IMG/VR virus record: IMGVR_UViG_3300045051_000720
Location: 62,001 to 126,000 of that record
Direction: 5' to 3' (one strand)
Length of the DNA stretch: 64,000 bases
Positions 5,709 through 15,118 of this stretch are shown here, one piece after another (position 1 is the stretch's first letter; every line of letters begins with the position of its first letter). The translations under genes were made by a program, and so were the position numbers. Below the pieces are notes generated by a model. The model did no database searches. It was not told the DNA's origin and worked only from the letters and a program-made list of their open reading frames with translations.

Positions 5709-7100
5709 ATGGCCTTCGGCAATCACTCTCGCCCGCGCGGCACCCGTGTCAACGGGGCTTATGTTCCCAACCCCGGTATCGCGCGGTTGTGGGAGGATTT
5801 CAAGGCATATGCCTCACCCCTCGGGTTTACACCCGATCAATGGCGATTCACCGAGGCGTTCTTCACCGGTCGCAACGTGTGTTTGTTGGGTCGAGCGGGT
5901 ACAGGCAAATCGTATGTGCTCAAGGCGCTGTTCGAGTACCTGACCAAACAGAAAGTGTCGGTGGGACGCACGGCCACGACTGGCGTTTCGGCGTTTGGGA
6001 TAGGTGGTCAAACGATCCATTCGTGGGCGGGGTTGGGTCTTGCGGACGAACATTCCGAGGCTATCATCGCGTCCATCCAGAAGAAGGGCAAGGTCAAGGC
6101 GCGGATTCGCGCGGCGCAGGTGTTGTTCATTGACGAGGTCTCGATGGCCAAGGCCGATCTGATGGACAAGCTGGATGCGGTGTTGCGCTATTACCGTGAC
6201 TCGGGCGATCCTTGGGGCGGCGTGCAAGTCGTTCTCTGCGGGGACTTTTTGCAACTTGCACCAGTCTTCAAGGGTGACGAGACCCAAGCCTTCGCTTTCC
6301 ACTCGGCGGTCTGGGATGAGGGTAACGTGCGTACCATCGTGCTCCAAAAGGTCGTTCGCCAGCAGGGCGATAATACGCTTTTGTCCATTCTCAACGACGT
6401 GCGCGTTGGCAATACCGATTCGCTCCATCTGCTGGACAGCCGGGTGGGCGCGACATGGCCCGACAACGAAATCGAGGCGGTGAGAATCTTCTGCAAGAAC
6501 ATTGATGTCGACGGGTACAACCGCGAACGCATGGCACAGCTCACCAGCGCCGCGAAGACCTACACTGCGCGCGATTCGGGCGAGTCTTTTCACACGGACA
6601 CGTTCAACAAGAACTGCCCCGCGCCGCAGGTGTTGGAGCTGAAGGTGGGGGCGCAGGTGCTCCTTGTTGCCAATCTGGATGTCCAGAGCGGCTTTGTGAA
6701 CGGTAGCGTAGGCATCGTCAAGGCTTTTGGTCCGAACGGGGTGACGGTCAAGTTCACCCAAGGTACGACCGTCGTCGAGCATAACGAGTGGACCATCAAG
6801 GAGCAGGCGGTCGGGATGGATGGCAAGATCATCTATCGCACGGTCGCCACGCGCCGACAGATCCCGCTCAAGGTGTGCTATGCGGTGACTACTCACCGGG
6901 TCCAAGGCATGACGCTGGACCGTGCGATTATTGACATGACGGAGGCCTTCACGACCGGGCAGGTGTACACCAGCCTGAGCCGTGTGCGTGATTTGGAATC
7001 ACTCTCGCTTGCCAGCGCCATTCCCCACTCGGCGATTCGAGTCAATCCCGAGTGCGTGGCGTTCTACGAGGAAGCGGAGCGGGCGGAGAACCCGTTTTAA
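5709..7100 (+). CDS. PIF1-family SF1B DNA helicase
   Basis: GRAGTGKS, IDEVSM, GDFLQLAPV, LKVGAQV, QGMTLD and GQVYTSLSR motifs; start moved to the ATG downstream of the promoter. Confidence 0.93.
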   Translation: MAFGNHSRPRGTRVNGAYVPNPGIARLWEDFKAYASPLGFTPDQWRFTEAFFTGRNVCLLGRAGTGKSYVLKALFEYLTKQKVSVGRTATTGVSAFGIGGQTIHSWAGLGLADEHSEAIIASIQKKGKVKARIRAAQVLFIDEVSMAKADLMDKLDAVLRYYRDSGDPWGGVQVVLCGDFLQLAPVFKGDETQAFAFHSAVWDEGNVRTIVLQKVVRQQGDNTLLSILNDVRVGNTDSLHLLDSRVGATWPDNEIEAVRIFCKNIDVDGYNRERMAQLTSAAKTYTARDSGESFHTDTFNKNCPAPQVLELKVGAQVLLVANLDVQSGFVNGSVGIVKAFGPNGVTVKFTQGTTVVEHNEWTIKEQAVGMDGKIIYRTVATRRQIPLKVCYAVTTHRVQGMTLDRAIIDMTEAFTTGQVYTSLSRVRDLESLSLASAIPHSAIRVNPECVAFYEEAERAENPF

Positions 7101-7880: not shown

Positions 7881-8528
7881 TTATCCCAGAAACGGCTTCC
7901 ACACGGGGTGCTTTGGGTCCTCGCGTAGATGCACGATCGGCGGCACACTCGCCGGAGCCTTCGGGCGCGGGCGCGGTAGACCCGCTTCTTCGGGGGTCTT
8001 GTCGGCCTTCATGGTGTTGATCCGCTTGTCGCAGGTGACGGTATTCTCCCATGTATCGCGACCACCTCGCGAGCGCGGATCGATGTGGTCAACCGACAGT
8101 TCGGCGCGGGTCAGTTTGCGCTTGGTGTAGGCGCAGATGAAGTTGTCGCGGCGGTGCACGTTACCCGTGGACCAGCGCGTGGTGCGCATGGGGATCTTGT
8201 CGAAGTGAGCACAGATGACCACCAGTGGCGCGCGGATGCGGCCCTCGGGATTGTCCGCACTGCGTCCGACGCCAATCCACAGGTCGCCTTCACGCACGGG
8301 CAGCTTAACCCAGTTTTCCCATGCGGTCGGTTGGGCACTGACCAGTACGTGATCGCCATTCTCGTCAACGGCGGTCGTGATGTCGAGCGCGTAGCCCGGG
8401 TGGTCTCCGTCAGACTGGGAGTTGAGAAACACCACCGCGTCTCTCACACTCATCTGATCTACGGGGGACCACGAGCGGTTGAGCTTGAGGACGATGGTCT
8501 TGTCGAGGATGCTGAGGTGATCGGACAT
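7881..8528 (-). CDS. HNH endonuclease (McrA-like)
   Basis: RDNFICAY, SVDHIDPRSRGG..TWENTV.C...N..KADKTPEEAG. Confidence 0.88.
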   Translation of the reverse strand: MSDHLSILDKTIVLKLNRSWSPVDQMSVRDAVVFLNSQSDGDHPGYALDITTAVDENGDHVLVSAQPTAWENWVKLPVREGDLWIGVGRSADNPEGRIRAPLVVICAHFDKIPMRTTRWSTGNVHRRDNFICAYTKRKLTRAELSVDHIDPRSRGGRDTWENTVTCDKRINTMKADKTPEEAGLPRPRPKAPASVPPIVHLREDPKHPVWKPFLG

Positions 8529-8577: not shown

Positions 8578-8665
8578 TGGCGGAAGCGAGAGGGCACGAT
8601 CCCCAACGCACGAGTCGTCCTGCGGTGTAGCACACCGTGGCAGTCGCCTGACTGCTTTCGCTTCC
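8578..8665 (-). tRNA. tRNA-Ser(GCT)
   Basis: Cloverleaf, long variable arm, G73-CCA. Confidence 0.8.
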
Positions 8666-8666
8666 G

Positions 8667-8755
8667 TGGCGGTAACAAGTGGGGTTCAACCACTGTGCAA
8701 TGAAGCACACTCTGGGTTTCGGGTCCAGTCGAGGAAAACGTCCTCAGTTGCTACC
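8667..8755 (-). tRNA. tRNA-Ser(CGA)
   Basis: Cloverleaf, long variable arm, GCCA end. Confidence 0.75.
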
Positions 8756-8842
8756 GGCGGAGTGGTGCCGTACTGCCCGGCTGCCGGTTGCCCGACACAA
8801 CGCTTTCCAAGCGCCGTCCACCTCTAGGTGGCCCAACCCTCC
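8756..8842 (-). tRNA. tRNA-Ser(GGA)
   Basis: GGCGC-TTGGAAA-GCGTT anticodon arm, long variable arm, bulged acceptor stem. Confidence 0.72.
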
Positions 8843-8875
8843 AAAAAGATACAGACCCGAGCGGGGTCTGTAAAG

Positions 8876-8969
8876 TGGCGGTGAGTTGAGATCTTGCGTC
8901 CCAAGGCGGGGTTGGCCCTCCTCCATTCGCTTTCAAGGCGGCGGCAGCGCCTCGGCTGCTTAACTCACC
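8876..8969 (-). tRNA. tRNA-Ser(TGA)
   Basis: CTTGAAA loop, long variable arm, GCCA end. Confidence 0.8.
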
Positions 8970-8973
8970 AAAG

Positions 8974-9049
8974 TGGTGCGGACACCCCGAGTTGCACGGG
9001 GACTATCCCTCGTTAGGACCGAGGTTGACTGTCTGTTGCCGATGTCCGC
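8974..9049 (-). tRNA. tRNA-Arg(CCT)
   Basis: CCTCG-GTCCTAA-CGAGG arm, ACCA end. Confidence 0.82.
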
Positions 9050-9537
9050 GAAAAATACTTGTCGCGCTCGACGGTGCGGCGACCCAGCTCTGCGCTGAGG
9101 AAGGCTGTCATCTTGCCGTTGTGACTCATGAGCTTGTCGGCCCACCCCACCATCAGCTGGTTGGGGCACACAAACGGTCCGCGCGCGTTGACGATCAGTT
9201 GGTAGGCATCAGAGTAAGGTATCCTGTGGTGGACCAGCCAGATGAAGGCTGCTGCGCTTGACCGCGATACGCCTGCGAAGCAGTGAAAGAGGATGGACTG
9301 GTCGGGGCTGGTTTGGGCGTAGACACCCAGTAGCCGCCGTATCATCGCCTCTGTGGGAGCGAGAGGGTTGGACGAGTTGCCCGTATCAGCGAACACAAAT
9401 GAGTGGAGAGTGAAGGGGTACTTGAACGCTCGGATGTCGGGGCCGGGTTGGTGGACCTCGTGGAAAGAGATGATGTGGTCCAGCAGAACCGTCGCGAAGG
9501 CAGGAACCTCGGAGACGCCACAAATAGCGAAGGGCAT
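9013..9537 (-). CDS. Cys-dependent (dual-specificity / tyrosine) phosphatase
   Basis: HCFAGVSRS P-loop, FAD acid loop and PN motif; own promoter at 9543-9571. Confidence 0.9.
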   Translation of the reverse strand: MPFAICGVSEVPAFATVLLDHIISFHEVHQPGPDIRAFKYPFTLHSFVFADTGNSSNPLAPTEAMIRRLLGVYAQTSPDQSILFHCFAGVSRSSAAAFIWLVHHRIPYSDAYQLIVNARGPFVCPNQLMVGWADKLMSHNGKMTAFLSAELGRRTVERDKYFSRTSATDSQPRS

Positions 9538-9572
9538 AGCCGATGCTAGTCCGTAATGAGGGCGCTGTCAAG

Positions 9573-9665
9573 TGGCGCGAACGGCAGGATTCTCACCCAC
9601 ATCAGGGCCGAGCGGCCCTTCACCTGCGTTCGAAGCGCAGTTGACGCTATTATGTCGGCGTTCGC
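9573..9665 (-). tRNA. tRNA-Arg(TCG), long variable arm
   Basis: CTGCG-CTTCGAA-CGCAG arm, GCCA end. Confidence 0.8.
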
Positions 9666-9666
9666 A

Positions 9667-9755
9667 TGGTCTCGACGGCGAGAGTTGCACTCGCAGATTG
9701 GCTTGCGCCAGACGGTTTAGAGGACCGTTGCCTTGTCTACCCGAGCCCCGTCGAG
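9667..9755 (-). tRNA. tRNA-Arg(TCT), long variable arm
   Basis: ACGGT-CCTCTAA-ACCGT arm, ACCA end. Confidence 0.75.
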
Positions 9756-9760
9756 GGAAA

Positions 9761-9837
9761 TGGCGCGAGACCGGGGATTCAAACCCCGACTGATCCTCGT
9801 TCGCAACGAGGGCGACTATTCGGTTGCCGAGTCTCGC
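9761..9837 (-). tRNA. tRNA-Arg(GCG)
   Basis: CCTCG-TTGCGAA-CGAGG arm, GCCA end. Confidence 0.82.
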
Positions 9838-9932
9838 AAAGAGATTGCACCGTCCCCAGTCGATGCGTCGCTGGGGAGCAGGACACCAGTAGGACATCGC
9901 ATTAGTCCACCCGGAGATTCCACGGTGCAAAT

Positions 9933-10007
9933 TGGGGCGCACGACCGGATCTACCCCGGCCCTCCAAGCGTCACAGGCTCGGGTGCTTCTACTACACTAC
10001 GTGCGCC
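9933..10007 (-). tRNA. tRNA-His(GTG)
   Basis: G-1:C73 pair, CTGTGAC loop. Confidence 0.85.
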
Positions 10008-10013
10008 ATAAGG

Positions 10014-10089
10014 TGGAGCTTCAGTAGGGGTTCTCACCCTCCTCTCTCGGATACAAGCCGAGGCCATCGAATGTCTATGGGTCTGAAGC
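10014..10089 (-). tRNA. tRNA-Thr(TGT)
   Basis: CTCGG-CTTGTAT-CCGAG arm, CCA end. Confidence 0.82.
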
Positions 10090-10093
10090 GAAA

Positions 10094-10167
10094 TGGAGCC
10101 GAGGACCGGTAACGCTCCGGTGTCTATCGTTTACGAAACGATGGCTCTGCTTTTGAGCTACCAAGGC
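10094..10167 (-). tRNA. tRNA-Thr(CGT)
   Basis: ATCGT-TTCGTAA-ACGAT arm, CCA end. Confidence 0.85.
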
Positions 10168-10171
10168 AAAG

Positions 10172-10247
10172 TGGTGGTCCCGGGAGAGCAACGATCCTCC
10201 ACGTCACGCCTATAAAGCGCGCAGTCTGCCGATTAACTTACAGGACC
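10172..10247 (-). tRNA. tRNA-Ile(TAT)
   Basis: CGCGC-TTTATAG-GCGTG arm, ACCA end. Confidence 0.78.
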
Positions 10248-10361
10248 AAAAGGAGGGCATCGGAATCATCTCGGCGCGCAGTGTGCACCTTACGATCCGT
10301 CAGCCCTATAGGTGGTTTGTTTACGAGACGGTGCGTTTAACGACACAGGGCGCAAACGAAA

Positions 10362-10481
10362 TGGTTCCACGGCTCAGGTCGATCAACCCCACCTTTGGCC
10401 AGCCACCTCAGCGAGGTTTGGTAGCTCGTTAGGCCCTTCGCTTCTGACGCCTCCAGTTGGATTGCCCTCAGTGACCGTGAA
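10362..10481 (-). ncRNA. Oversized tRNA-like RNA (120 nt)
   Basis: TTCACGG/CCGTGGA acceptor-like stem plus ACCA; internal arms non-canonical. Confidence 0.45.
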
Positions 10482-10484
10482 AGA

Positions 10485-10570
10485 TGGTGGGCGTGGAGGG
10501 ATGCGAGCCCTCAAGGACAACGGAATTTGAACCCGTCGCTTCTACCAGTTTCGCTTTCGTCCACACGCCC
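10485..10570 (-). tRNA. tRNA-Leu(CAA), atypical architecture
   Basis: ACGGG-TTCAAAT-TCCGT arm; extra GGACG/TGTCC pairing. Confidence 0.8.
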
Positions 10571-10572
10571 GA

Positions 10573-10655
10573 TCGGCATGGTGGGATTCGGACCCACAGG
10601 GGATAGCGCATTTTAAGTGCGCCGGTTGTCGCCAGTTTCCCTTATCCACATGCCG
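10573..10655 (-). tRNA. tRNA-Leu(TAA), atypical architecture
   Basis: GCGCA-CTTAAAA-TGCGC arm; extra GGATA/TATCC pairing; CCA not encoded. Confidence 0.8.
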
Positions 10656-10661
10656 GTAAGA

Positions 10662-10736
10662 TGGTGGGACCATGGAGCCAACGCACTCCAATCTCCGCGC
10701 TGAGAACGCGGCGAACTACTCTTATTCGATGATCCC
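10662..10736 (-). tRNA. tRNA-Glu(CTC)
   Basis: CCGCG-TTCTCAG-CGCGG arm, ACCA end. Confidence 0.82.
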
Positions 10737-10737
10737 G

Positions 10738-10820
10738 TAGGCGTGGAGAGATTCGGACTCTCAAGGACACGTGATCCTAAGTCACGCGGTTCTGCCAATT
10801 TCCCTTCCGTCCACACGCCC
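10738..10820 (-). tRNA. tRNA-Leu(TAG), atypical architecture
   Basis: CGTGA-CTTAGGA-TCACG arm; extra GGACG/TGTCC pairing. Confidence 0.8.
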
Positions 10821-10826
10821 ATAAAA

Positions 10827-10917
10827 TGGTGGCCTCGGGGGGAGTCGGACCCCCACGCTACTATGATTTCGCTCGCGAATCTCATTCGCGCATGTCTACC
10901 AGTTCCATCACGAGGCC
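10827..10917 (-). tRNA. tRNA-Leu(GAG)
   Basis: Class II cloverleaf, ATGAGAT loop, ACCA end. Confidence 0.85.
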
Positions 10918-10994
10918 GAGGTCCCAGTCGGAGTTGCACCGACCCTGTTCGTCATTACCAATGACGCGCCGTGGCTACACTCGGCATTGGGACC
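10918..10994 (-). tRNA. tRNA-Thr(GGT)
   Basis: CGTCA-TTGGTAA-TGACG arm. Confidence 0.82.
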
Positions 10995-10999
10995 ATAAA

Positions 11000-11076
11000 T
11001 GGGGGCTCAGGTCAGATTTGCACTGACGACCGTCTCCGTATGGGGGAGCCGCGCTAGCTAGCTGCGCCACTGAGCC
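11000..11076 (-). tRNA. tRNA-Met(CAT) elongator (Ile2 not excluded)
   Basis: CTCC-CCCATAC-GGAG arm, CCA end. Confidence 0.72.
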
Positions 11077-11077
11077 G

Positions 11078-11153
11078 TGGTGGTCCCGTCGAGATTCGCA
11101 CTCGCCTCATCCGATTAAGAGTCGGAGTCCTCGCCTATCTAGGAGTCGAGACC
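11078..11153 (-). tRNA. tRNA-Lys(CTT)
   Basis: TCCGA-CTCTTAA-TCGGA arm, ACCA end. Confidence 0.87.
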
Positions 11154-11161
11154 GTAAAGTA

Positions 11162-11452
11162 TTCAACCGCGTAGCCGCGTTTCTGTTGCCGGGCCATCCC
11201 GACCGACATCCATTTCTCTCACCCACGGTCACCCGTGAACGGGTATCGTTTATAGACACCTGCACCAACCACGCCCTGCTTGACGGCCAGAACTAGCCTC
11301 GGGCTCCATTTGGCTTGCTGGTATCGTGTGGTTATCGCGAGTGTCTACCGACGTAACATCGTCGGGACTGCTCTCCCATCGACTTCTGTCCAGACGCGAA
11401 CTTGACCTCTACGCACGCATCGAGTGCGCGGCAGCGGATGTCTGCGGTTGAA
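11162..11452 (-). ncRNA. rnpB: RNase P RNA (compact, ~290 nt)
   Basis: P1 TTCAACCGC/GCGGTTGAA; P2 GACATCC/GGATGTC; CR-I GAGGTCAAGTTCGCGT pairing with CR-V AACAGAAACGCGGCTA (P4); CAGCAAGCCAAAT; GAGAGAAATG. Confidence 0.85.
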
Positions 11453-11455
11453 AGA

Positions 11456-11530
11456 TGGTGGAGGTACCGAGTGCCGCCCTCGGGCTTGAGTCATGCCATG
11501 ACCCTGTGCTGCTGTTATCACTATACCCCC
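11456..11530 (-). tRNA. tRNA-Ala(GGC)
   Basis: G3:U70 pair, ATGGCAT loop, ACCA end. Confidence 0.87.
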
Positions 11531-11604
11531 GCTGCCTCGGAGCGAATTGCACGCCCACCTAACACCTTCAGAGGGTGTCGGACTAGCTGTTATCCCACGA
11601 GGCA
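11531..11604 (-). tRNA. tRNA-Gln(CTG)
   Basis: U1-A72, ACACC-CTCTGAA-GGTGT arm. Confidence 0.85.
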
Positions 11605-11638
11605 AAAGTGATAGGGGTGACAAAACTGACCCGTCATT

Positions 11639-11709
11639 GGGTCAGTAGTGTAGTGGTAGCACGTCCGCCTGACTGGCGGGGGGCGCGGGTTCAAATCCCG
11701 TCTGATCCA
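11639..11709 (+). tRNA. tRNA-Val(GAC), inverted relative to the array
   Basis: Canonical GTGT-AGTGGTA-GCAC D arm and GGTTCAAATCC T loop on the + strand. Confidence 0.72.
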
Positions 11710-11715
11710 TTTAAT

Positions 11716-11791
11716 TGGCTGCCCACCACGGATGACAGCCGTGACCCTCGCCTTCAAAGGGCGGTATGCTTGACGTTTACATCAATGGGCA
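11716..11791 (-). tRNA. tRNA-Gln(TTG)
   Basis: CTTTGAA loop, GCCA end. Confidence 0.82.
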
Positions 11792-11798
11792 ATGAGAG

Positions 11799-11876
11799 TG
11801 GTCGGCGTGGAGGGATTCGCACCCCCGATCCTTCGCTTCCGGAGCGAGCATGTTGGCTAGGCTACACCACACGCCG
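11799..11876 (-). tRNA. tRNA-Pro(CGG)
   Basis: C1-G72, TCCGGAA loop, ACCA end. Confidence 0.85.
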
Positions 11877-11977
11877 ATATTGCGGGCCGGTTATCCATCC
11901 GGCGGCACCCGGCTTGATGGTGAGCAAGACGGAGACTCTGGAATTGGCGTGATTTTATGGCTCACGCCGCCGCAAAA

Positions 11978-12055
11978 TGGTCCTCGCGGCAGGCTTCGCT
12001 CCTGCGGCCTTCTGCATGTCGTGCAGCCGCTCTAACTGGGCTGAGCTACGCGAGG
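11978..12055 (-). tRNA. tRNA-Val(GAC)
   Basis: CTGC-ACGACAT-GCAG arm, ACCA end. Confidence 0.82.
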
Positions 12056-12060
12056 GAAAG

Positions 12061-12138
12061 TGGTCGGGCCAGTTGGATTCGCACCAACGATCTCATGCTC
12101 CCCGAGCATGCGCGATGACTAGGCTACGCTATGACCCG
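12061..12138 (-). tRNA. tRNA-Pro(GGG)
   Basis: CATGC-TCGGGGA-GCATG arm, ACCA end. Confidence 0.87.
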
Positions 12139-12237
12139 ATTGGCAGATACCGTCTGTTACTCCCACCGTGGTGTCCCGTCTGCCGCGGGGCTTTAGGTGG
12201 TGTTTGGGTAATCCAAACGTCTCGTGAACGGCTAAGA

Positions 12238-12336
12238 TGGCTGTACCGGTAGGAGCCGCCCCTACACCGCCGCAGGTCATGCGTACGGGCTCGCTTAACA
12301 GGCGAGTGCAACGAACGTGCTATTTGCCTCGGTACA
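12238..12336 (-). tRNA. tRNA-Asn(GTT), long variable arm
   Basis: CTCGC-CTGTTAA-GCGAG arm, GCCA end, 99 nt. Confidence 0.78.
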
Positions 12337-12342
12337 ATAAAA

Positions 12343-12418
12343 TGGTCGTCGCTGAGGGACTCGCACCCCCGAACCTCTGCGTGTAGGGCAGGTACCGTAG
12401 CTGCTGGGTCAAGCGACG
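12343..12418 (-). tRNA. tRNA-Val(TAC)
   Basis: CCTACAC loop, ACCA end. Confidence 0.82.
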
Positions 12419-12422
12419 AAAG

Positions 12423-12499
12423 TGGCGCGATAGATGGGTGCTGCCCCCACTTGTCTCGGCATAGACAGTGCCGCGAGCATGCTGTTGCTCTTCTACCGC
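12423..12499 (-). tRNA. tRNA-Asp(GTC)
   Basis: CGGCA-CTGTCTA-TGCCG arm, GCCA end. Confidence 0.85.
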
Positions 12500-12501
12500 G
12501 T

Positions 12502-12573
12502 ACGGATGGAGGGACTCGCACCCCCGTTATGTCCGGTCCCAAACCGGAAGCCATTGCTGCTAGGCGACATCCG
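12502..12573 (-). tRNA. tRNA-Pro(TGG)
   Basis: TCCGG-TTTGGGA-CCGGA arm. Confidence 0.8.
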
Positions 12574-12580
12574 TGTGAAA

Positions 12581-12653
12581 TGGATGCAGGGCCGAGGAAT
12601 CGCACCCGGTCAGGGCGACGGGTATGAACCGCGCTTGGTCTAACCTCCCTGCG
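12581..12653 (-). tRNA. Initiator-like tRNA-fMet(CAT) with reduced D arm
   Basis: C1:A72 mismatch, TTCATAC loop, CCA end. Confidence 0.7.
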
Positions 12654-12660
12654 TAAAGTG

Positions 12661-12810
12661 TTCCCTTTGTAGGCGTGCTCCAACGCCTCGTTGTTTGTCA
12701 AAATGGCCGGTGCTCTACCGTTGAGCTAGCATCCTCCTTGCGAAGGACCGCAGGTGTCGAACCTGTATCTCCGGCAAGTGTTACCTTGCGGGCTTTTGAC
12801 CTCTAGGGAA
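12661..12810 (-). ncRNA. YrlA-like Y RNA (circularly permuted tRNA-mimic domain on a long stem)
   Basis: T arm (CAGGTTCGACACCTG), then closed acceptor stem, then D arm (GCTCAACGGTAGAGC), enclosed by GCCGG/CCGGC, GTCAAAA/TTTTGAC and TTCCCT/AGGGAA stems. Confidence 0.72.
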
Positions 12811-12812
12811 AG

Positions 12813-12885
12813 TGGTGGAGCCCCGGGCATCGCAGCCCAACGACAGCCGGATTTTCAGTCCAGCCCGTGCACTCGCACTGACTCC
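12813..12885 (-). tRNA. tRNA-Phe(GAA)
   Basis: CTGGA-CTGAAAA-TCCGG arm, ACCA end; short D arm. Confidence 0.72.
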
Positions 12886-12943
12886 GGAGCCATCGTTAGG
12901 TCCGCCGATGGCGCAGGCGGTCTCGGGTTATTGACGAGGAAGA

Positions 12944-13020
12944 TGGGACGGACGGTGGGTAGCGCGCCCACATGAAGCCGGATTTGGAGTTCGGTGCCTT
13001 ACTTGTCGAGCCACGTCCGT
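12944..13020 (-). tRNA. tRNA-Trp(CCA)
   Basis: CTCCAAA loop, CCA end. Confidence 0.8.
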
Positions 13021-13195
13021 ATGAAAAGGTGGAGCGAAGAGATGGTCATTTATTCACCGGGCTGGGACCAATCCACGAGGTGCCCGATCCAGATGTCTCC
13101 TGCCTCGCTCCGTTTGGAGACCAACGAGTGATGTGGTGTCAGGTTCCTGTAGGCTTCACTGACACCGACCCGCGGCGTGAACCGCGAGGTGAAGA

Positions 13196-13269
13196 TGGTG
13201 GTCAAGTCGGGTGCTGCCCCCGCGTCTAACGGTTATCGACCGTTGGCTCTACTGTTGAGCTACATGACC
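13196..13269 (-). tRNA. tRNA-Ile(GAT)
   Basis: AACGG-TCGATAA-CCGTT arm, ACCA end. Confidence 0.87.
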
Positions 13270-13399
13270 AAAATTGCTGTCGCGGTCAACCCGCGTTTCG
13301 GCTCAGCTTGGCCGTTTGCAAAATGGCGACTACGTTAACCAGTCTTGACCGGAGGCGTGCTTGCGGGCGCGTCGTAGCCCGTTGGGTATTAGCCCAAAG

Positions 13400-13491
13400 T
13401 GGTGGACCCGGAGGGAGTTGCACCCCCGACGCCCCGTTAGGGGTCCAGATTTACAGTCTGGTGCAGCCATCTGACAGCTACCTCGTGGTCC
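13400..13491 (-). tRNA. tRNA-Tyr(GTA)
   Basis: CCAGA-CTGTAAA-TCTGG arm, long variable arm, ACCA end. Confidence 0.85.
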
Positions 13492-13497
13492 GAAAAA

Positions 13498-13572
13498 TGG
13501 AGCGTCGTGCGGGACTCCCACCCGCGTGTGTCTGCTTGGAAGGCAGATGCCTTGGTTCTCGGCCAACGACGC
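13498..13572 (-). tRNA. tRNA-Gly(TCC)
   Basis: TCTGC-CTTCCAA-GCAGA arm, TCCA end. Confidence 0.87.
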
Positions 13573-13632
13573 ATGGGGTTTATCGCCACCGCGGAGCGGC
13601 TGATTGGTTACAGCGGGGTGGAAGCCCCAAGA

Positions 13633-13707
13633 TGGTGGAGTCAACGAGATCCGCCCTCGTATGTCACGGATGCAAACCGTGTGCCTTTCTATGTCGGCCA
13701 TGACCCC
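13633..13707 (-). tRNA. tRNA-Ala(TGC)
   Basis: G3:U70, CACGG-TTTGCAT-CCGTG arm. Confidence 0.87.
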
Positions 13708-13709
13708 AT

Positions 13710-13781
13710 TGGACCCGGCGAGTGCCGCCCTCGCGCCTCCGCGTTGCGAACGCAGCGTGCTACTGTTGTCACCACGAGCCC
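13710..13781 (-). tRNA. tRNA-Ala(CGC)
   Basis: G3:U70, CTGCG-TTCGCAA-CGCGG arm. Confidence 0.85.
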
Positions 13782-13786
13782 GAAAA

Positions 13787-13967
13787 GAGTGACACGATAG
13801 ACTTGTCCGGCAGTCTGGGGAGTCTTGCGGGACTCCTATGGCCTAAACCACGTCTTACGCCGCCTCTTGCCTTAACGCGCGGCCCTTTCCCTTGCGGGTA
13901 CTCAGGGGCTCATCGGCTGTGGATAGAGGACGGACTGTTGGTCCGGGTAGTATCTATCGTGTTGCCC
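13787..13967 (-). ncRNA. 6S-RNA-like rod (~180 nt)
   Basis: Closing stem ACACGATAGAT/GTCTATCGTGT, internal stems, central bubble with 3-prime hairpin GGAGTC-CCGCAA-GACTCC. Confidence 0.45.
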
Positions 13968-14053
13968 CGGTTAGGATCGACTCCGCCGAGGCGAAAAAGG
14001 ATGCCGGACCCCAGCTTTCGCTTGCGGGCGTCCCCTCGCGGGTCCGACGTAAG

Positions 14054-14129
14054 TGGAGGCGCGCCACGGTGCTGCCCCGTGCAAACAGTGTTTTGCAAAC
14101 ACGTCTCGTCGCTGGCTGAGTCGCGCGCC
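14054..14129 (-). tRNA. tRNA-Cys(GCA)
   Basis: TTGCAAA loop, U73-CCA. Confidence 0.85.
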
Positions 14130-14176
14130 ATTGAGCTAACCACGCCAAGGGGGACCAACAGGTGTCGCTCAGGAAA

Positions 14177-14252
14177 TGGTGGGTCCATCGGGCATCGATC
14201 CCGCTTCCACGGTTTAAAAGACCGCTGCTAATCCGGCTACAGCTCTGGACCC
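14177..14252 (-). tRNA. tRNA-Lys(TTT)
   Basis: GCGGT-CTTTTAA-ACCGT arm, ACCA end. Confidence 0.85.
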
Positions 14253-14254
14253 AT

Positions 14255-14326
14255 TGCGGGTAGGGAGACTTGCGCTCCCCTCTCAGCCTTGGCAAAGCCG
14301 TGCGTCGCTATCTACGCTTCACCCGC
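14255..14326 (-). tRNA. tRNA-Gly(GCC)
   Basis: CGGCT-TTGCCAA-GGCTG arm. Confidence 0.82.
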
Positions 14327-14427
14327 GAAAAGTGTCCGATGGGAGAACTGTCAAACCCCCTATGCCCTATGCGCATGGCGTCTCGTTGGTCGGACCCAAC
14401 GGCAGGTATCGATCCTGCGAACATGAC

Positions 14428-14502
14428 GGTGACCGCACCCGGATTCCCACCGGGGTTCTTCGCTGGAAAGGCGAGAGTACTGGGGTGCTATACGATGCGG
14501 CC
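14428..14502 (-). tRNA. tRNA-Glu(TTC)
   Basis: TCGC-CTTTCCA-GCGA arm. Confidence 0.82.
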
Positions 14503-14515
14503 AAAAGTGGGCTGA

Positions 14516-15118
14516 CTACGAAGCCGTCCGACCAGTCGCCGGAGTGAGAAATGACGGAACACAAGGACGGTCAGGACGATTATACCGACTCCTTGGACAG
14601 AGAGCACCTAAAGGTAGAGCCGGTGGGGTAATCTTAGGCGCGTTCTCCCTCTTCCGTTTGTGTTCTATTTGACCATGAAAGCGATCAAATCCTAGCATTC
14701 TAGCGGCTGTGATAGCAACGTGATGGTCTTGTGTCTGTCCGAGACGAAAGGAGAGATCGTTGCGATCTTCTAGTCCGAAATCTTTGACGAGCTTATCTTT
14801 TTGGGAGCTGGTCAGATACTGGAAGATAGCCCTTCGATGAATACTTCGAGGCTCTTTCACCGTTGGCTTGTTTCGGGTAGCCCTTTCTGCGCGGTGATGT
14901 GCCTCGTGACAATCCCGACACAGTACCTCCAGATCCTCCATTCGTTCGTTACCACCTACCCGTTCGTAGGTTTTGTGATGGACATCGGTGCCGTGTTCAT
15001 GACATCGATTACAAACGGGACCATAGTAAGCAATCGCCTCAGCCCGCTTGGCCTTCCAGATGGGTGACTGGAGGTATTGACGATGGAGCAATTGATTGTC
15101 GGTAAGATGCTGGGCCAC
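14516..15118 (-). CDS. HNH endonuclease
   Basis: YLQSPIWKAKR...CNRC...VHHKTY...DLEVLCRDCHEAHH. Confidence 0.88.
   Translation of the reverse strand: MAQHLTDNQLLHRQYLQSPIWKAKRAEAIAYYGPVCNRCHEHGTDVHHKTYERVGGNERMEDLEVLCRDCHEAHHRAERATRNKPTVKEPRSIHRRAIFQYLTSSQKDKLVKDFGLEDRNDLSFRLGQTQDHHVAITAARMLGFDRFHGQIEHKRKRENAPKITPPALPLGALCPRSRYNRPDRPCVPSFLTPATGRTAS

What the first reader, a model, noticed from the sequence alone, without database searches (positions are those of the whole stretch)
8578..14502. Systematic rewiring of the tRNA elbow: no array tRNA keeps T54-T55-C56
SEEN: none of the - strand tRNA T loops I read has canonical TTC. Most have G55 (TGCAA, TGCGA, GGCAG, GGCGG, TGAGA), the Leu set has TCCGA or CTCGC, and many D loops show AG in place of G18G19 (AACAGTA, AACAGCA, CCTAGCC). 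KNOWN: G18-Psi55 and G19-C56 are near-universal and are read by modification enzymes, RNase P and the ribosome. INFERENCE: array-wide selection for an alternative A18/G55 elbow, perhaps to evade a host factor that recognises standard elbows. It would also make automated tRNA scanners under-call the array.
Basis: partly seen in the sequence, partly recalled or inferred. Interest (0 to 1): 0.6.

Follow-up and report, generated by a model that had tools for sequence, protein, structure and literature searches.

The report
Phage tRNA set with rewired elbow
A 219-kb soil phage carries 41 tRNA genes for all 20 amino acids in which the near-universal G18/U55 corner contact is replaced by a matched A18/G55 pair; the same array family occurs in Verrucomicrobia chromosomes, and I found no description of it.

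Summary
Window 8578-14502 (- strand) holds 41 tRNA genes for all 20 amino acids. None has T54-T55-C56; 31 have G55. The change is compensated. Over 751 distinct tRNAs from this and other arrays, a G55-C56 T loop goes with A18-G19 in the D loop (425/456). U55-C56 goes with G18-G19 (245/250). Position 19 stays Watson-Crick to 56.

The new T loops (UGCRA, CGCRA, GGCRG) match the non-tRNA T-loop class, YGNRA with an intercalating adenosine.

The genes look functional. Stems are full of compensatory changes, and synthetase identity elements are kept.

The array is not private to this phage. Syntenic all-A18/G55 arrays occur in other viral contigs and in Verrucomicrobia (Opitutaceae) chromosomes. 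There the housekeeping tRNAs are canonical (33/34). Many of those arrays lie beside Ro60/Rsr genes and Y-RNA-like elements, and some beside RtcB. The Y-RNA-like elements keep canonical elbows. In Bdellovibrionales the only tRNA-Cys has the same elbow.

Scanners under-call the array: ARAGORN finds 13/41 and Rfam 8/41. Why the whole array switched is not shown. Evasion of, or discrimination by, a T-loop-reading activity is my preferred inference.

The parts
14430..14502 (-). tRNA-Glu(UUC); D loop AGCACCCCA (A18C19), T loop TGGGAAT (G55G56); no full CCA
14255..14326 (-). tRNA-Gly(GCC); D AGATAGCG (A18G19), T CGCAAGT; no CCA, abuts next tRNA
14177..14252 (-). tRNA-Lys(UUU); D TAGCCGGAT (G18G19), T ATCGATG (A54 U55 C56)
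14054..14129 (-). tRNA-Cys(GCA); U73; D has AG, T GGCAGCA
13710..13781 (-). tRNA-Ala(CGC); G3:U70; D CAACAGTA, T GGCGGCA; no CCA
13633..13707 (-). tRNA-Ala(UGC); G3:U70; D ACATAGAA, T GGCGGAT
13498..13572 (-). tRNA-Gly(UCC); U73; D AGAACCA (A18C19), T TGGGAGT (G55G56)
13400..13491 (-). tRNA-Tyr(GUA), long variable arm; T TGCAACT; D loop ambiguous, 2 acceptor mismatches
13196..13269 (-). tRNA-Ile(GAU); D AACAGTA, T GGCAGCA; C33
12944..13020 (-). tRNA-Trp(CCA); D GACAAGTA, T CGCGCTA
12813..12885 (-). tRNA-Phe(GAA)-like, irregular D arm, 6-nt T loop TGCGAT
12501..12574 (-). tRNA-Pro(UGG); D AGCAGCAA, T TGCGAGT; no CCA
12423..12499 (-). tRNA-Asp(GUC); G73; D AACAGCAT, T GGCAGCA
12343..12418 (-). 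tRNA-Val(UAC); D AGCAGCTA, T TGCGAGT; C33; 97% identical to L039 copy
12238..12336 (-). tRNA-Asn(GUU) with 24-nt variable arm; T GGCGGCT
12061..12138 (-). tRNA-Pro(GGG); C1:G72; D AGCCTAGTCA, T TGCGAAT
11978..12055 (-). tRNA-Val(GAC); D AGCCCAGTTA, T AGCGAAG; C33
11799..11876 (-). tRNA-Pro(CGG); C1:G72; D AGCCTAGCCA, T TGCGAAT
11716..11791 (-). tRNA-Gln(UUG); U1:A72, G73; T CTGTCAT (odd)
11532..11604 (-). tRNA-Gln(CUG); U1:A72, G73; D AACAGCTA, T TGCAATT; no CCA
11456..11530 (-). tRNA-Ala(GGC); G3:U70; D TAACAGCA, T GGCGGCA
11078..11153 (-). tRNA-Lys(CUU); A8; D AGATAGGCG, T TGCGAAT
11000..11076 (-). tRNA-Met(CAU), elongator type; D AGCTAGCTA, T TGCAAAT; C33
10919..10994 (-). tRNA-Thr(GGU); D AGTGTAGCCA, T TGCAACT; no CCA
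10827..10917 (-). tRNA-Leu(GAG), long variable arm; D has G18G19, T TCCGACT (C55C56)
10738..10820 (-). tRNA-Leu(UAG), aberrant long D region, short variable region; T TCCGAAT
10662..10736 (-). tRNA-Glu(CUC); D AAGAGTA, 8-nt T loop TGCGTTGG
10573..10655 (-). tRNA-Leu(UAA), aberrant long D region; T TCCGAAT
10485..10570 (-). tRNA-Leu(CAA), aberrant long D region with TGG; T CTCGCAT (U55C56)
10172..10247 (-). tRNA-Ile(UAU); D AATCGGCA (G18G19), T ATCGTTGC (U55C56)
10094..10167 (-). tRNA-Thr(CGU); D AAAAGCA, T AGCGTTA (A54/U58)
10014..10089 (-). tRNA-Thr(UGU); A8; D AGACATTCG (A18U19), T TGAGAAC (G55A56)
9933..10007 (-). tRNA-His(GUG) with G-1 and C73; D AGTAGAA, T GGTAGAT
9761..9837 (-). tRNA-Arg(GCG); D has G18A19, T TTTGAAT (U55U56)
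9667..9755 (-). tRNA-Arg(UCU) with 17-nt variable arm; T TGCAACT
9573..9665 (-). tRNA-Arg(UCG) with 23-nt variable hairpin; D ATAATAGCG (A18U19), T TGAGAAT (G55A56)
8974..9049 (-). tRNA-Arg(CCU); D has AG, T TGCAACT
8876..8969 (-). tRNA-Ser(UGA), G73; T CGCAAGA
8758..8842 (-). tRNA-Ser(GGA)-like, degenerate (2 acceptor mismatches; D hairpin CCACC-TAGA-GGTGG); T GGCAGTA
8667..8755 (-). tRNA-Ser(CGA), G73; T TTGAACC; C33
8578..8665 (-). tRNA-Ser(GCU), G73; D has GG, T ATCGTG(C)
11639..11709 (+). tRNA-like gene on the opposite strand with canonical elbow (AGTGGTA / TTCAAAT), anticodon loop CTGACTG (U37), no CCA
   Evidence: (60.3 bits)
12679..12796 (-). weak YrlA (Y-RNA)-like candidate: canonical T arm ACAGG-TTCGACA-CCTGC, hairpin, canonical D arm GCTC-AACGGTA-GAGC
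   Evidence: 17.5 bits, below the Rfam cut-off of 69; clearer counterparts in related arrays
9013..9537 (-). ORF inside the array: Cys-based dual-specificity-type phosphatase (HCxxGxxRS)
7881..8528 (-). HNH (HNH_4, Cas9/IscB-type) endonuclease gene directly after the last tRNA; conserved at the end of related arrays
14516..15118 (-). second HNH endonuclease gene directly before the first tRNA

Best explanation
The region is a complete auxiliary set of working tRNA genes: 41 genes, 20 amino acids. The D-loop/T-loop elbow is built with a different but equivalent tertiary solution. The canonical design is G18 intercalating and bonding to U(Psi)55. Here A18 partners G55, while position 19 still pairs in Watson-Crick fashion with 56, usually G19-C56. 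The T loops become UGCRA, CGCRA or GGCRG. That is the T-loop class used by riboswitches and rRNA, in which an adenosine intercalates between loop positions 4 and 5. The L-shape and its outer stacking face are therefore expected to persist. The chemistry read by T-loop enzymes is lost: no U55 means no Psi55, U54 is often absent, and there is no G18. The array belongs to a mobile family, often ending in an HNH gene. That family is shared by several large phages and by chromosomal islands of Verrucomicrobia. In those islands it often lies with Ro60/Rsr and Y-RNA-like RNAs, and in some with an RtcB ligase, i.e. an RNA-damage/repair setting. Shown here: the covariation, the conservation, the identity elements, the distribution and the canonical host set. 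Inferred: the tRNAs are charged and used in translation; the array-wide switch is maintained because it makes this pool insensitive to, or distinguishable by, an activity that reads the U54-U55/G18 elbow of ordinary tRNAs. Such an activity could be a T-loop nuclease or a modifier, from the host or from a mobile element.
For: Covariation. Over 751 distinct tRNAs, G55C56 goes with AG in 425/456 and U55C56 with GG in 245/250. G55A56 goes with AT in 8/13, G55G56 with AC in 8/11 and U55A56 with GT in 3/4. In arrays outside this family the Fisher test gives P = 9e-43.
T-loop class. Riboswitch T loops are UGNRA (89%) or CGNRA (11%) with an intercalating adenosine, and an rRNA type GGAAG exists (bioRxiv 10.1101/2022.12.26.521914).
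Function. All three Ala tRNAs have G3:U70. His has G-1:C73, Cys and Gly-UCC have U73, Ser has G73, two of the three Pro tRNAs have C1:G72 and Gln has U1:A72 with G73. In stem comparisons with same-anticodon tRNAs of related arrays, 2749 pairs changed on both sides yet stayed paired and 118 were lost.
The elbow works in ordinary translation: the only tRNA-Cys of a Bdellovibrionaceae genome has it, and so does tRNA-Cys in about 35 other Bdellovibrionales assemblies.
Family. Syntenic all-A18/G55 arrays occur in viral contigs. They also occur in about 23 Verrucomicrobia loci, including two complete chromosomes.
Host housekeeping tRNAs are canonical in 33/34.
Not one founder: the best canonical match has the same amino acid for 10/24 window tRNAs, against a null mean of 1.6 and a null maximum of 7.
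Internal control: Y-RNA-like elements inside these arrays keep TTCRA with GG.
Repair context: TROVE genes in 15 loci, RtcB beside four arrays and in the phage itself.
Precedents: a tRNase that cuts the T loop between T and Psi exists (PMC9086364). Phage tRNAs escaping anticodon nucleases through loop changes have been proposed (PMC10264068).
Against: No expression, charging or modification data exist. The DNA occurs in one rhizosphere metagenome run and no RNA run. No elbow-reading nuclease or modifier was identified in the phage or in the islands. The same arrays sit in bacterial chromosomes, so a simple 'phage evades host' reading is incomplete. A few members look degenerate (Ser-GGA, Phe, Tyr). 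The similarity to same-amino-acid canonical tRNAs could partly reflect convergent identity elements. The pair counts are not phylogenetically independent. The host assignment to Verrucomicrobia rests only on the shared array and the HNH homologue.
Confidence: 0.7

Rival explanations
1. Historical contingency. A18/G55 is a neutral, fully compensated isoform. The ancestor of this mobile array happened to be all-A18/G55, or drifted there. The state persists only because reverting needs two mutations through a mismatched intermediate. No factor is evaded.
For: The isoform arises sporadically in many unrelated phage arrays and in about 15 different isoacceptor types. It serves as the sole tRNA-Cys in Bdellovibrionales, so it seems functionally equivalent. 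Mismatched combinations are rare: GG with GC in 15/456 and AG with TC in 12/250. This fits a fitness valley that locks in either state.
Against: Elsewhere the isoform is a minority, a few tRNAs per array (L107, L120, L021, L023). In this family it is about 95% across deeply diverged arrays with GC content from about 40% to over 60%. Array tRNAs resemble canonical tRNAs of the same amino acid more than chance allows, which argues for many separate conversions. Y-RNA-like elements in the same loci kept canonical elbows over the same time.
Confidence: 0.2
2. Independence from host maturation enzymes. The set is built to fold and decode without host tRNA-modifying enzymes or chaperones, so that a burst of new tRNAs works at once during infection or stress. 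G55 replaces the need for TruB and Psi55.
For: G55 cannot be pseudouridylated, and 54 is often not U. The anticodon set uses Arg-GCG instead of ACG and Ile-UAU instead of CAU, avoiding dependence on TadA and TilS. The host itself uses Arg-ACG. CCA is encoded in 31/41 genes.
Against: Loss of TruB or TrmA is only mildly harmful in model bacteria (my own knowledge). Other tRNA-rich phages such as Bxz1 keep canonical elbows. Ten array tRNAs lack CCA and still need host CCA addition.
Confidence: 0.2
3. The array is a graveyard of decaying tRNA pseudogenes or tRNA-derived repeats with no role in translation.
For: Scanner scores are low. A few members have irregular arms (Phe, Ser-GGA, the Leu trio). 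There are many departures from 'universal' bases (U8, U33, U54, U55).
Against: The 18-55 and 19-56 covariation is near perfect. Compensatory stem changes are massive. Amino-acid identity elements are retained. The anticodon set covers all 20 amino acids. Gene order is conserved across distant genomes.
Confidence: 0.02

Closest known systems
tRNA gene arrays of large phages and bacterial 'tRNA array units' (e.g. mycobacteriophage Bxz1; Mycobacterium arrays, PMC5966550, PMC6409571)
   Same: A dense block of tens of tRNA genes covering most or all amino acids, on phages and mobile islands. Ro60/TROVE and RNA-repair genes occur elsewhere in the same genome or island.
   Different: Bxz1's tRNAs have canonical elbows: 22 GG/TTC and 2 GG/ATC. 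Here the whole array uses A18/G55, and I found no paper describing that.
Non-tRNA T-loop motif class YGNRA with an adenosine intercalator (FMN and cobalamin riboswitches, rRNA; bioRxiv 10.1101/2022.12.26.521914)
   Same: The loop sequences match: UGNRA, CGNRA and a GGNNG variant. A purine A is donated by the partner loop. G sits at loop position 2.
   Different: That class was described as excluding tRNA T loops. Here it is used inside tRNAs, with the tRNA-specific 19-56 pair retained. No 3D evidence is available.
Staphylococcal non-proteinogenic tRNA-Gly (cell-wall synthesis)
   Same: Natural bacterial tRNAs that lack G18, G19, U55 and C56 (PMC4574755). From memory, GT-Psi-C is replaced there by GUGC.
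   Different: Those are a few specialised Gly tRNAs with weak EF-Tu binding and a D loop without the compensating A18G19. Here it is a full decoding set with a compensated elbow and G19-C56 kept.
Phage tRNAs that escape tRNA-targeting defences through anticodon-loop changes (PMC10264068; PARIS/AriB, PMC12409363)
   Same: The concept of a phage-borne replacement tRNA pool that differs from host tRNAs at the site a nuclease reads. This array also has frequent C33.
   Different: The distinguishing change is in the elbow, not the anticodon loop. No cognate nuclease is known. The only T-loop tRNase precedent I found is CdiA-CT E479.
Rsr (Ro60)-YrlA-RtcB RNA repair modules (PMC4201824, PMC7790460, PMC7824862)
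   Same: A TROVE protein, Y-RNA-like RNAs with a tRNA-like T/D module, and RtcB are present beside the related arrays. The phage has RtcB.
   Different: In these loci the module is interleaved with 20-40 tRNA genes of the alternative-elbow type. The window phage lacks a TROVE gene.
Metazoan mitochondrial tRNAs with non-canonical elbows
   Same: Loss of the G18G19 and T-Psi-C consensus.
   Different: Mitochondrial tRNAs largely lose or weaken D/T docking. Here the contact is replaced by a covarying pair, and the cloverleaf is otherwise standard.

Membership tests
tRNA (Rfam RF00005) | Cloverleaf with 7-bp acceptor stem, D, anticodon and T arms, and a 7-nt anticodon loop | tested here: met
   About 31 of 41 pass a cloverleaf search with a bounded number of stem mismatches, against control scores of 35 or less elsewhere in the window. 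The rest fit with relaxed rules.
tRNA (Rfam RF00005) | Score at or above the curated gathering threshold (29 bits) | tested here: inconclusive
   8 of 41 pass in the standard whole-window scan. 14 of 41 reach 29 bits or more with laxer filters on 8 kb. The others score 20-27 bits or are missed.
tRNA (canonical elbow) | G18G19 in the D loop and T54-Psi55-C56 in the T loop | tested here: not met
   0/41 have TTC; 31/41 have G55; most D loops have A18G19.
tRNA (functional, bacterial type) | Synthetase identity elements appropriate to the anticodon | tested here: met
   Ala G3:U70 in 3/3. His G-1:C73. Cys U73. Gly-UCC U73. Ser G73. Pro C1:G72 in 2/3. Gln U1:A72 with G73. Tyr, Ser and Leu-GAG have long arms.
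tRNA (functional) | Transcribed, processed, aminoacylated | not testable with these tools
   No RNA run holds this DNA.
Phage/MGE tRNA array | 20 or more tRNA genes at high density on one strand of a phage or mobile element | tested here: met
   41 genes in 5.9 kb of a 219-kb virus record with T4-like replication genes.
YGNRA-type T loop with adenosine intercalator | Loop positions 1-5 are Y-G-N-R-A (or the GGNNG variant), and the partner donates an A | tested here: met
   In the G55 class the 54/58 combinations are UA 335, CA 34 and GG 41; position 57 is always a purine; A18 is present in 93%. Consensus taken.
YGNRA-type T loop with adenosine intercalator | Three-dimensional geometry: A18 stacked between 57 and 58, G55 making the turn | not testable with these tools
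   No RNA 3D tool or structure is available.
YrlA Y RNA (RF02553), window 12679-12796 | Rfam gathering score (69 bits) and a neighbouring TROVE gene | tested here: not met
   17.5 bits, and no TROVE gene in the phage. Related arrays have 33-41-bit matches beside TROVE genes.

The most novel reading that the evidence does not exclude
The A18/G55 elbow is an orthogonality tag. It defines a second tRNA pool that is immune to, or separately handled by, a T-loop-directed tRNA-inactivating activity that acts on canonical U54-U55/G18 tRNAs in conflicts among Verrucomicrobia, their phages and mobile islands. The Y-RNA-like elements in the same arrays deliberately keep a canonical elbow and act as bait or sensor for that activity within the Rsr/RtcB repair module.
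Probability: 0.3. Interest if true: 0.9.

Novelty: new variant of a known kind. Interest (0 to 1): 0.72.

Why it matters
G18-Psi55 and T54-Psi55-C56 are treated as invariant features of elongator tRNAs. They are built into gene finders and into models of how RNase P, CCA-adding enzyme, TruB/TrmA, EF-Tu, the ribosome and T-boxes read tRNA. Several hundred natural tRNAs break that rule in a lawful, compensated way. They include whole decoding sets and an essential single-copy bacterial tRNA-Cys. This gives four things:
(1) A natural experiment on what the elbow must be chemically as opposed to geometrically.
(2) A ready-made candidate scaffold for tRNAs that are invisible to T-loop enzymes.
(3) A concrete reason why tRNA complements of phages and Verrucomicrobia are under-annotated.
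(4) A testable lead that the elbow, not only the anticodon loop, may be a battleground in tRNA-targeting conflicts.

Tried and rejected
- MAFFT alignments of the array tRNAs (A1, A2) misaligned the 5' halves. I therefore built no covariance model and used my own segment-wise cloverleaf parser instead.
- Relatives of the Dda-like helicase next to the array (L001-L008, 27-28% identity) carry no tRNAs.
- The array-embedded phosphatase has no relatives in viral contigs by the pattern search. It matches only generic dual-specificity phosphatases.
- GenBank phages hold no match to the array DNA or to two of its tRNAs. The UvsX-like protein has only a 23.5% hit.
- Only one DNA run, the probable source rhizosphere metagenome, holds the region and no RNA run does.
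- The short pattern search for the Cys anticodon loop was uninformative and was replaced by an RF00005 scan.
- The UvsX-like protein found no phage kin in the MAG contigs or in the L015 record. The arrays therefore sit in unrelated genetic backgrounds.
- The phage has no TROVE gene, no CCA-adding enzyme and no PF09414-type RNA ligase.
- Pseudogene decay and a single-founder origin were considered and judged unlikely.
- Five literature searches found no report of A18/G55 covariation. Subscription-only papers are not covered, so prior description cannot be excluded.

Full report
SETTING
The window is bases 62001-126000 of a single 219,464-bp contig with 59% G+C. The tools treat it as a virus record, 96% complete by CheckV. 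It encodes T4-like functions: a UvsX-like recombinase, a Dda-like helicase, a repair exonuclease, ribonucleotide reductase, and GIY-YIG and HNH homing endonucleases. The DNA is held by one rhizosphere metagenome run, probably its source, and by no RNA run.

THE OBSERVATION
ARAGORN at default settings tRNAs on the - strand and one on the + strand. Rfam at its gathering score on the - strand. Three further steps raise the count: lowering ARAGORN's threshold, Rfam in E-value mode, and a cloverleaf search of my own that ignores loop sequence.

The curated count is 41 - strand tRNA genes between 8578 and 14502. They read all 20 amino acids. They are mostly separated by only a few bases, with CCA encoded in 31. 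The ten without CCA include nine that abut the next tRNA.

None has T54-T55-C56. Thirty-one have G55 (TGC, GGC, CGC, AGC, TGG, TGA, GGT). Seven have U55 but not TTC. Three Leu tRNAs have UCC.

Control sets are canonical:
- 33 of 34 class-I housekeeping tRNAs of an Opitutaceae chromosome.
- 41 of 43 tRNAs of a Bdellovibrionaceae genome.
- 22 of 25 tRNAs of mycobacteriophage Bxz1.
The predicted under-calling by scanners is also real.

WHAT THE CHANGE IS
A scan of IMG/VR for one of the odd T arms returned 40 loci. The same motif with a downstream CCA returned 75 loci from bacterial genomes. Parsing all of them gave 751 distinct tRNAs. Within the permitted D-loop register, the pattern is:
- T loops with G55-C56 have AG at 18-19 in 425 of 456 cases, and GG in 15.
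- T loops with U55-C56 have GG in 245 of 250, and AG in 12.
- G55-A56 goes with AU (8/13), G55-G56 with AC (8/11), and U55-A56 with GU (3/4).

The rule is A18 with G55, or G18 with U55, plus a Watson-Crick 19-56 pair. In arrays outside this family, where both types sit side by side, the counts are 182 GG/TC, 39 AG/GC, 1 AG/TC and 0 GG/GC (Fisher P = 9e-43).

The window obeys the rule in detail:
- Lys-UUU, Ile-UAU, Leu-CAA and Ser-GCU keep U55-C56 and also G18G19.
- Arg-GCG has U55-U56 with G18-A19.
- Gly-UCC and Glu-UUC have G55-G56 with A18-C19.
- Thr-UGU and Arg-UCG have G55-A56 with A18-U19.

A published analysis of T loops reports that riboswitch T loops are UGNRA (89%) or CGNRA (11%). It reports that the base intercalating between loop positions 4 and 5 is almost always adenosine. 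It also reports that an rRNA variant GGAAG exists and that tRNA's UUCRA is a separate class. The array's UGCRA, CGCRA and GGCRG loops with A18 therefore look like that other class transplanted into tRNA. G18 is the intercalator in canonical tRNA (established knowledge). The outer G19-C56 pair, on which RNase P, the ribosome and T-boxes stack, is kept.

ARE THEY WORKING tRNAs?
Synthetase identity elements are in place:
- G3:U70 in all three Ala tRNAs.
- G-1 and C73 in His.
- U73 in Cys and in Gly-UCC.
- G73 in Ser and Asp.
- C1:G72 in two of the three Pro tRNAs.
- U1:A72 with G73 in Gln.
- Long arms in Tyr, Ser and Leu-GAG.

I compared window tRNAs with same-anticodon tRNAs of related arrays. 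3095 stem pairs are identical, 2749 changed on both sides and stayed paired, 271 changed on one side and stayed paired, and 118 were lost. These counts are not independent, but the pattern is unambiguous.

The elbow also works in ordinary translation. In a 3.26-Mb Bdellovibrionaceae genome the single tRNA-Cys gene has AGGAGTT in the D loop and TGCGAGT in the T loop, and 41 of the other 42 tRNAs are canonical. tRNA-Cys has the same elbow in about 35 other Bdellovibrionales assemblies. A few window members (Ser-GGA, Phe, Tyr) look degenerate.

THE FAMILY
Viral contigs of 82-238 kb (L015, L029/L031, L032, L039, L042, L027, and partly L047 and L038) carry arrays that are almost entirely A18/G55. 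Where the gene order can be followed, as in L015 and L029, it matches the window.

About 23 Verrucomicrobia loci (Opitutaceae, Lacunisphaera, Akkermansiaceae) do too. They include complete chromosomes of 6.5 and 8.9 Mb, and the second chromosome has two arrays. In the 6.5-Mb chromosome the array is flanked by ordinary genes: a LysR regulator, an ECF sigma factor and an ABC transporter. The scattered housekeeping tRNAs there are canonical.

The HNH gene just after the last window tRNA is 37% identical to the gene in the same position in that chromosome. Homologues occur in 16 array loci. The array is thus a mobile module found in unrelated backgrounds. It also suggests, weakly, a verrucomicrobial host for this phage.

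Array tRNAs resemble canonical tRNAs of the same amino acid more often than chance allows: 10/24 and 8/20 top hits, against null means of 1.6 and 1.4. This argues against descent from a single rewired founder gene.

CONTEXT
Inside or beside the related arrays lie a TROVE (Ro60/Rsr) gene in 15 loci, three of them viral, and an RtcB ligase in at least four loci. There are also Y-RNA-like elements of the YrlA type. These reach 33-41 bits, below Rfam's cut-off of 69, but they have the diagnostic T-arm, hairpin and D-arm order.

These Y-RNA-like elements keep canonical TTCRA loops and G18G19, although they are surrounded by rewired tRNAs. The window has only a weak candidate (12679-12796, 17.5 bits) and no TROVE gene. 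The phage does encode RtcB, 5 kb beyond the window's end.

Ro60 with tRNA-like Y RNAs, RtcB and tRNA sets are known companions in bacteria and jumbo phages, and they are linked to tRNA damage. Bxz1 has both a Ro-like gene and a tRNA array but canonical elbows. The rewiring is therefore specific to this family.

WHY THE WHOLE ARRAY?
This part is inference. Chemistry dictates that G55 cannot become pseudouridine. In many members U54 and G18 are gone as well, so these tRNAs present a different T loop to anything that reads U54-U55 or G18.

A toxin that cuts tRNA between T and Psi in the T loop is on record. The idea that phage tRNAs escape nucleases by changing the recognised loop has been proposed for anticodon loops. 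The array-wide frequency argues for a pressure tied to discriminating the two kinds of elbow. So do the persistence across deep divergence, the canonical Y-RNA-like neighbours and the RNA-repair context.

I hold this at moderate confidence. The rivals are a locked-in neutral isoform and independence from host modification enzymes. The anticodon set supports the second rival: it uses Arg-GCG and Ile-UAU, avoiding TadA and TilS. Pseudogene decay is excluded by the sequence evidence.

NOVELTY
Phage tRNA arrays, Ro60/Y-RNA/RtcB modules and the YGNRA T-loop class are all known. A lawful A18/G55 elbow has three features here: it is used array-wide, it is shared between phages and Verrucomicrobia chromosomes, and it is fixed in the sole tRNA-Cys of Bdellovibrionales. 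Five full-text searches did not find it described. Those searches do not cover subscription-only literature. I rate it a new variant of a known kind.

LIMITS
There is no RNA-level evidence. The host is not established. No 3D modelling was possible. My D-loop register rule is heuristic, although the 19-56 covariation supports it. The loci were found with a G55 T-arm pattern, so frequencies of the isoform outside the family are biased upward. The association tests are not affected by that bias.

Noticed in passing
window 12679-12796 (-); L061:5534-5601 and 6074-6181; L125:2919-2985: Y-RNA-like (YrlA-type) elements with a canonical TTCRA T loop and G18G19 lie inside arrays whose tRNAs all use A18/G55. 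In relatives they lie next to a TROVE/Ro60 gene. The window copy is weak (17.5 bits) and the phage has no TROVE gene.
   Followed up: partly
window 11639-11709 (+): A lone tRNA-like gene on the opposite strand, in the middle of the array, has a fully canonical elbow (60.3 bits). Its anticodon loop is CTGACTG (GAC with U37) and it has no CCA. No counterpart was found in the fetched related arrays. Its role is unknown.
   Followed up: partly
window 10738-10820, 10573-10655, 10485-10570 (-): Leu-UAG, Leu-UAA and Leu-CAA lack a long variable hairpin. Instead, a 5' insertion after position 8-9 (GGAC or GGAT) can pair with the variable region (GTCC or ATCC; it covaries), enclosing a D-like hairpin and the anticodon arm. 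In L027 and L125 some Leu tRNAs are plain class I with 5-nt variable regions.
   Followed up: partly
window 9667-9755, 9573-9665, 12238-12336 (-): Arg-UCU, Arg-UCG and Asn-GUU carry long variable arms of 17-24 nt, some with GNRA-capped hairpins. This feature is normally confined to Leu, Ser and Tyr in bacteria. Similar arms occur on Ile, Cys, Thr, Pro and Met tRNAs in related arrays.
   Followed up: no
window array and related arrays: The 'universal' U33 is C in 16% of G55-class tRNAs, and nearly always in Val-GAC (15/15) and Leu-GAG (10/11). In the window it is C in Val-GAC, Val-UAC, Met, Ile-GAU, Pro-GGG, Pro-CGG, Arg-UCU and Ser-CGA. U8 is often A or G, for example A8 in the Thr tRNAs with a D loop ending in CG.
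   Followed up: partly
window 8578-14502: The anticodon set uses Arg-GCG rather than ACG, and Ile-UAU rather than a CAU/lysidine tRNA. There is no recognisable initiator tRNA. Decoding would not need TadA or TilS but would still need the host initiator.
   Followed up: no
window 9013-9537 (-): A 174-aa Cys-based dual-specificity-type phosphatase gene (motif HCFAGVSRS) sits between Arg-UCG and Arg-CCU. No homologue was seen in related arrays. It could be an RNA-end phosphoesterase, but nothing tested supports that.
   Followed up: partly
G000:C1:131160-132473 (5 kb beyond the window end); L126:978-2567: The phage encodes an RtcB RNA ligase (279 bits), preceded by a PD-(D/E)XK nuclease gene. An RtcB gene also lies about 2 kb past the array in the Opitutaceae chromosome, followed by a SEC-C-motif protein and Sua5/TsaC.
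   Followed up: partly
L195 (G003:C1:566018-566088) and L178: In Bdellovibrionaceae the sole tRNA-Cys has A18G19 with a TGCGAGT T loop. In the same genome tRNA-Gly(GCC) has G18A19 with TTTGAGC, a 19-56 A-U swap.
   Followed up: yes
window spacers, e.g. 13782-14057, 13270-13403, 13021-13199, 11154-11459, 10248-10485 (-): Nearly every tRNA is followed by CCA-YTT(T). The long spacers also end in ...CAC/CCA-TTTT and contain several CCGCAAG (GNRA) hairpins, so they may hold further unassigned small RNAs. A tRNA 5'-half-like fragment (GGCGTGGTTAGCTCAATGG) lies just upstream of tRNA-Cys, at about 14130-14150.
   Followed up: no
window 7881-8528 (-) and 14516-15118 (-); 16 array loci: HNH endonuclease genes with a Cas9/IscB-type HNH domain bracket the array. 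The downstream one has homologues at the ends of Verrucomicrobia, Planctomycetota and other phage tRNA arrays. This suggests HNH-assisted mobility of tRNA arrays.
   Followed up: partly
L107, L120 (Planctomycetota); L078 (Thermophilibacter); L021, L023 (viral): Otherwise canonical tRNA arrays contain a few A18/G55 members, often Cys, Ala-CGC, Arg-GCG, Ser-CGA or Ser-GCU. The switch therefore recurs in single genes in unrelated lineages.
   Followed up: partly
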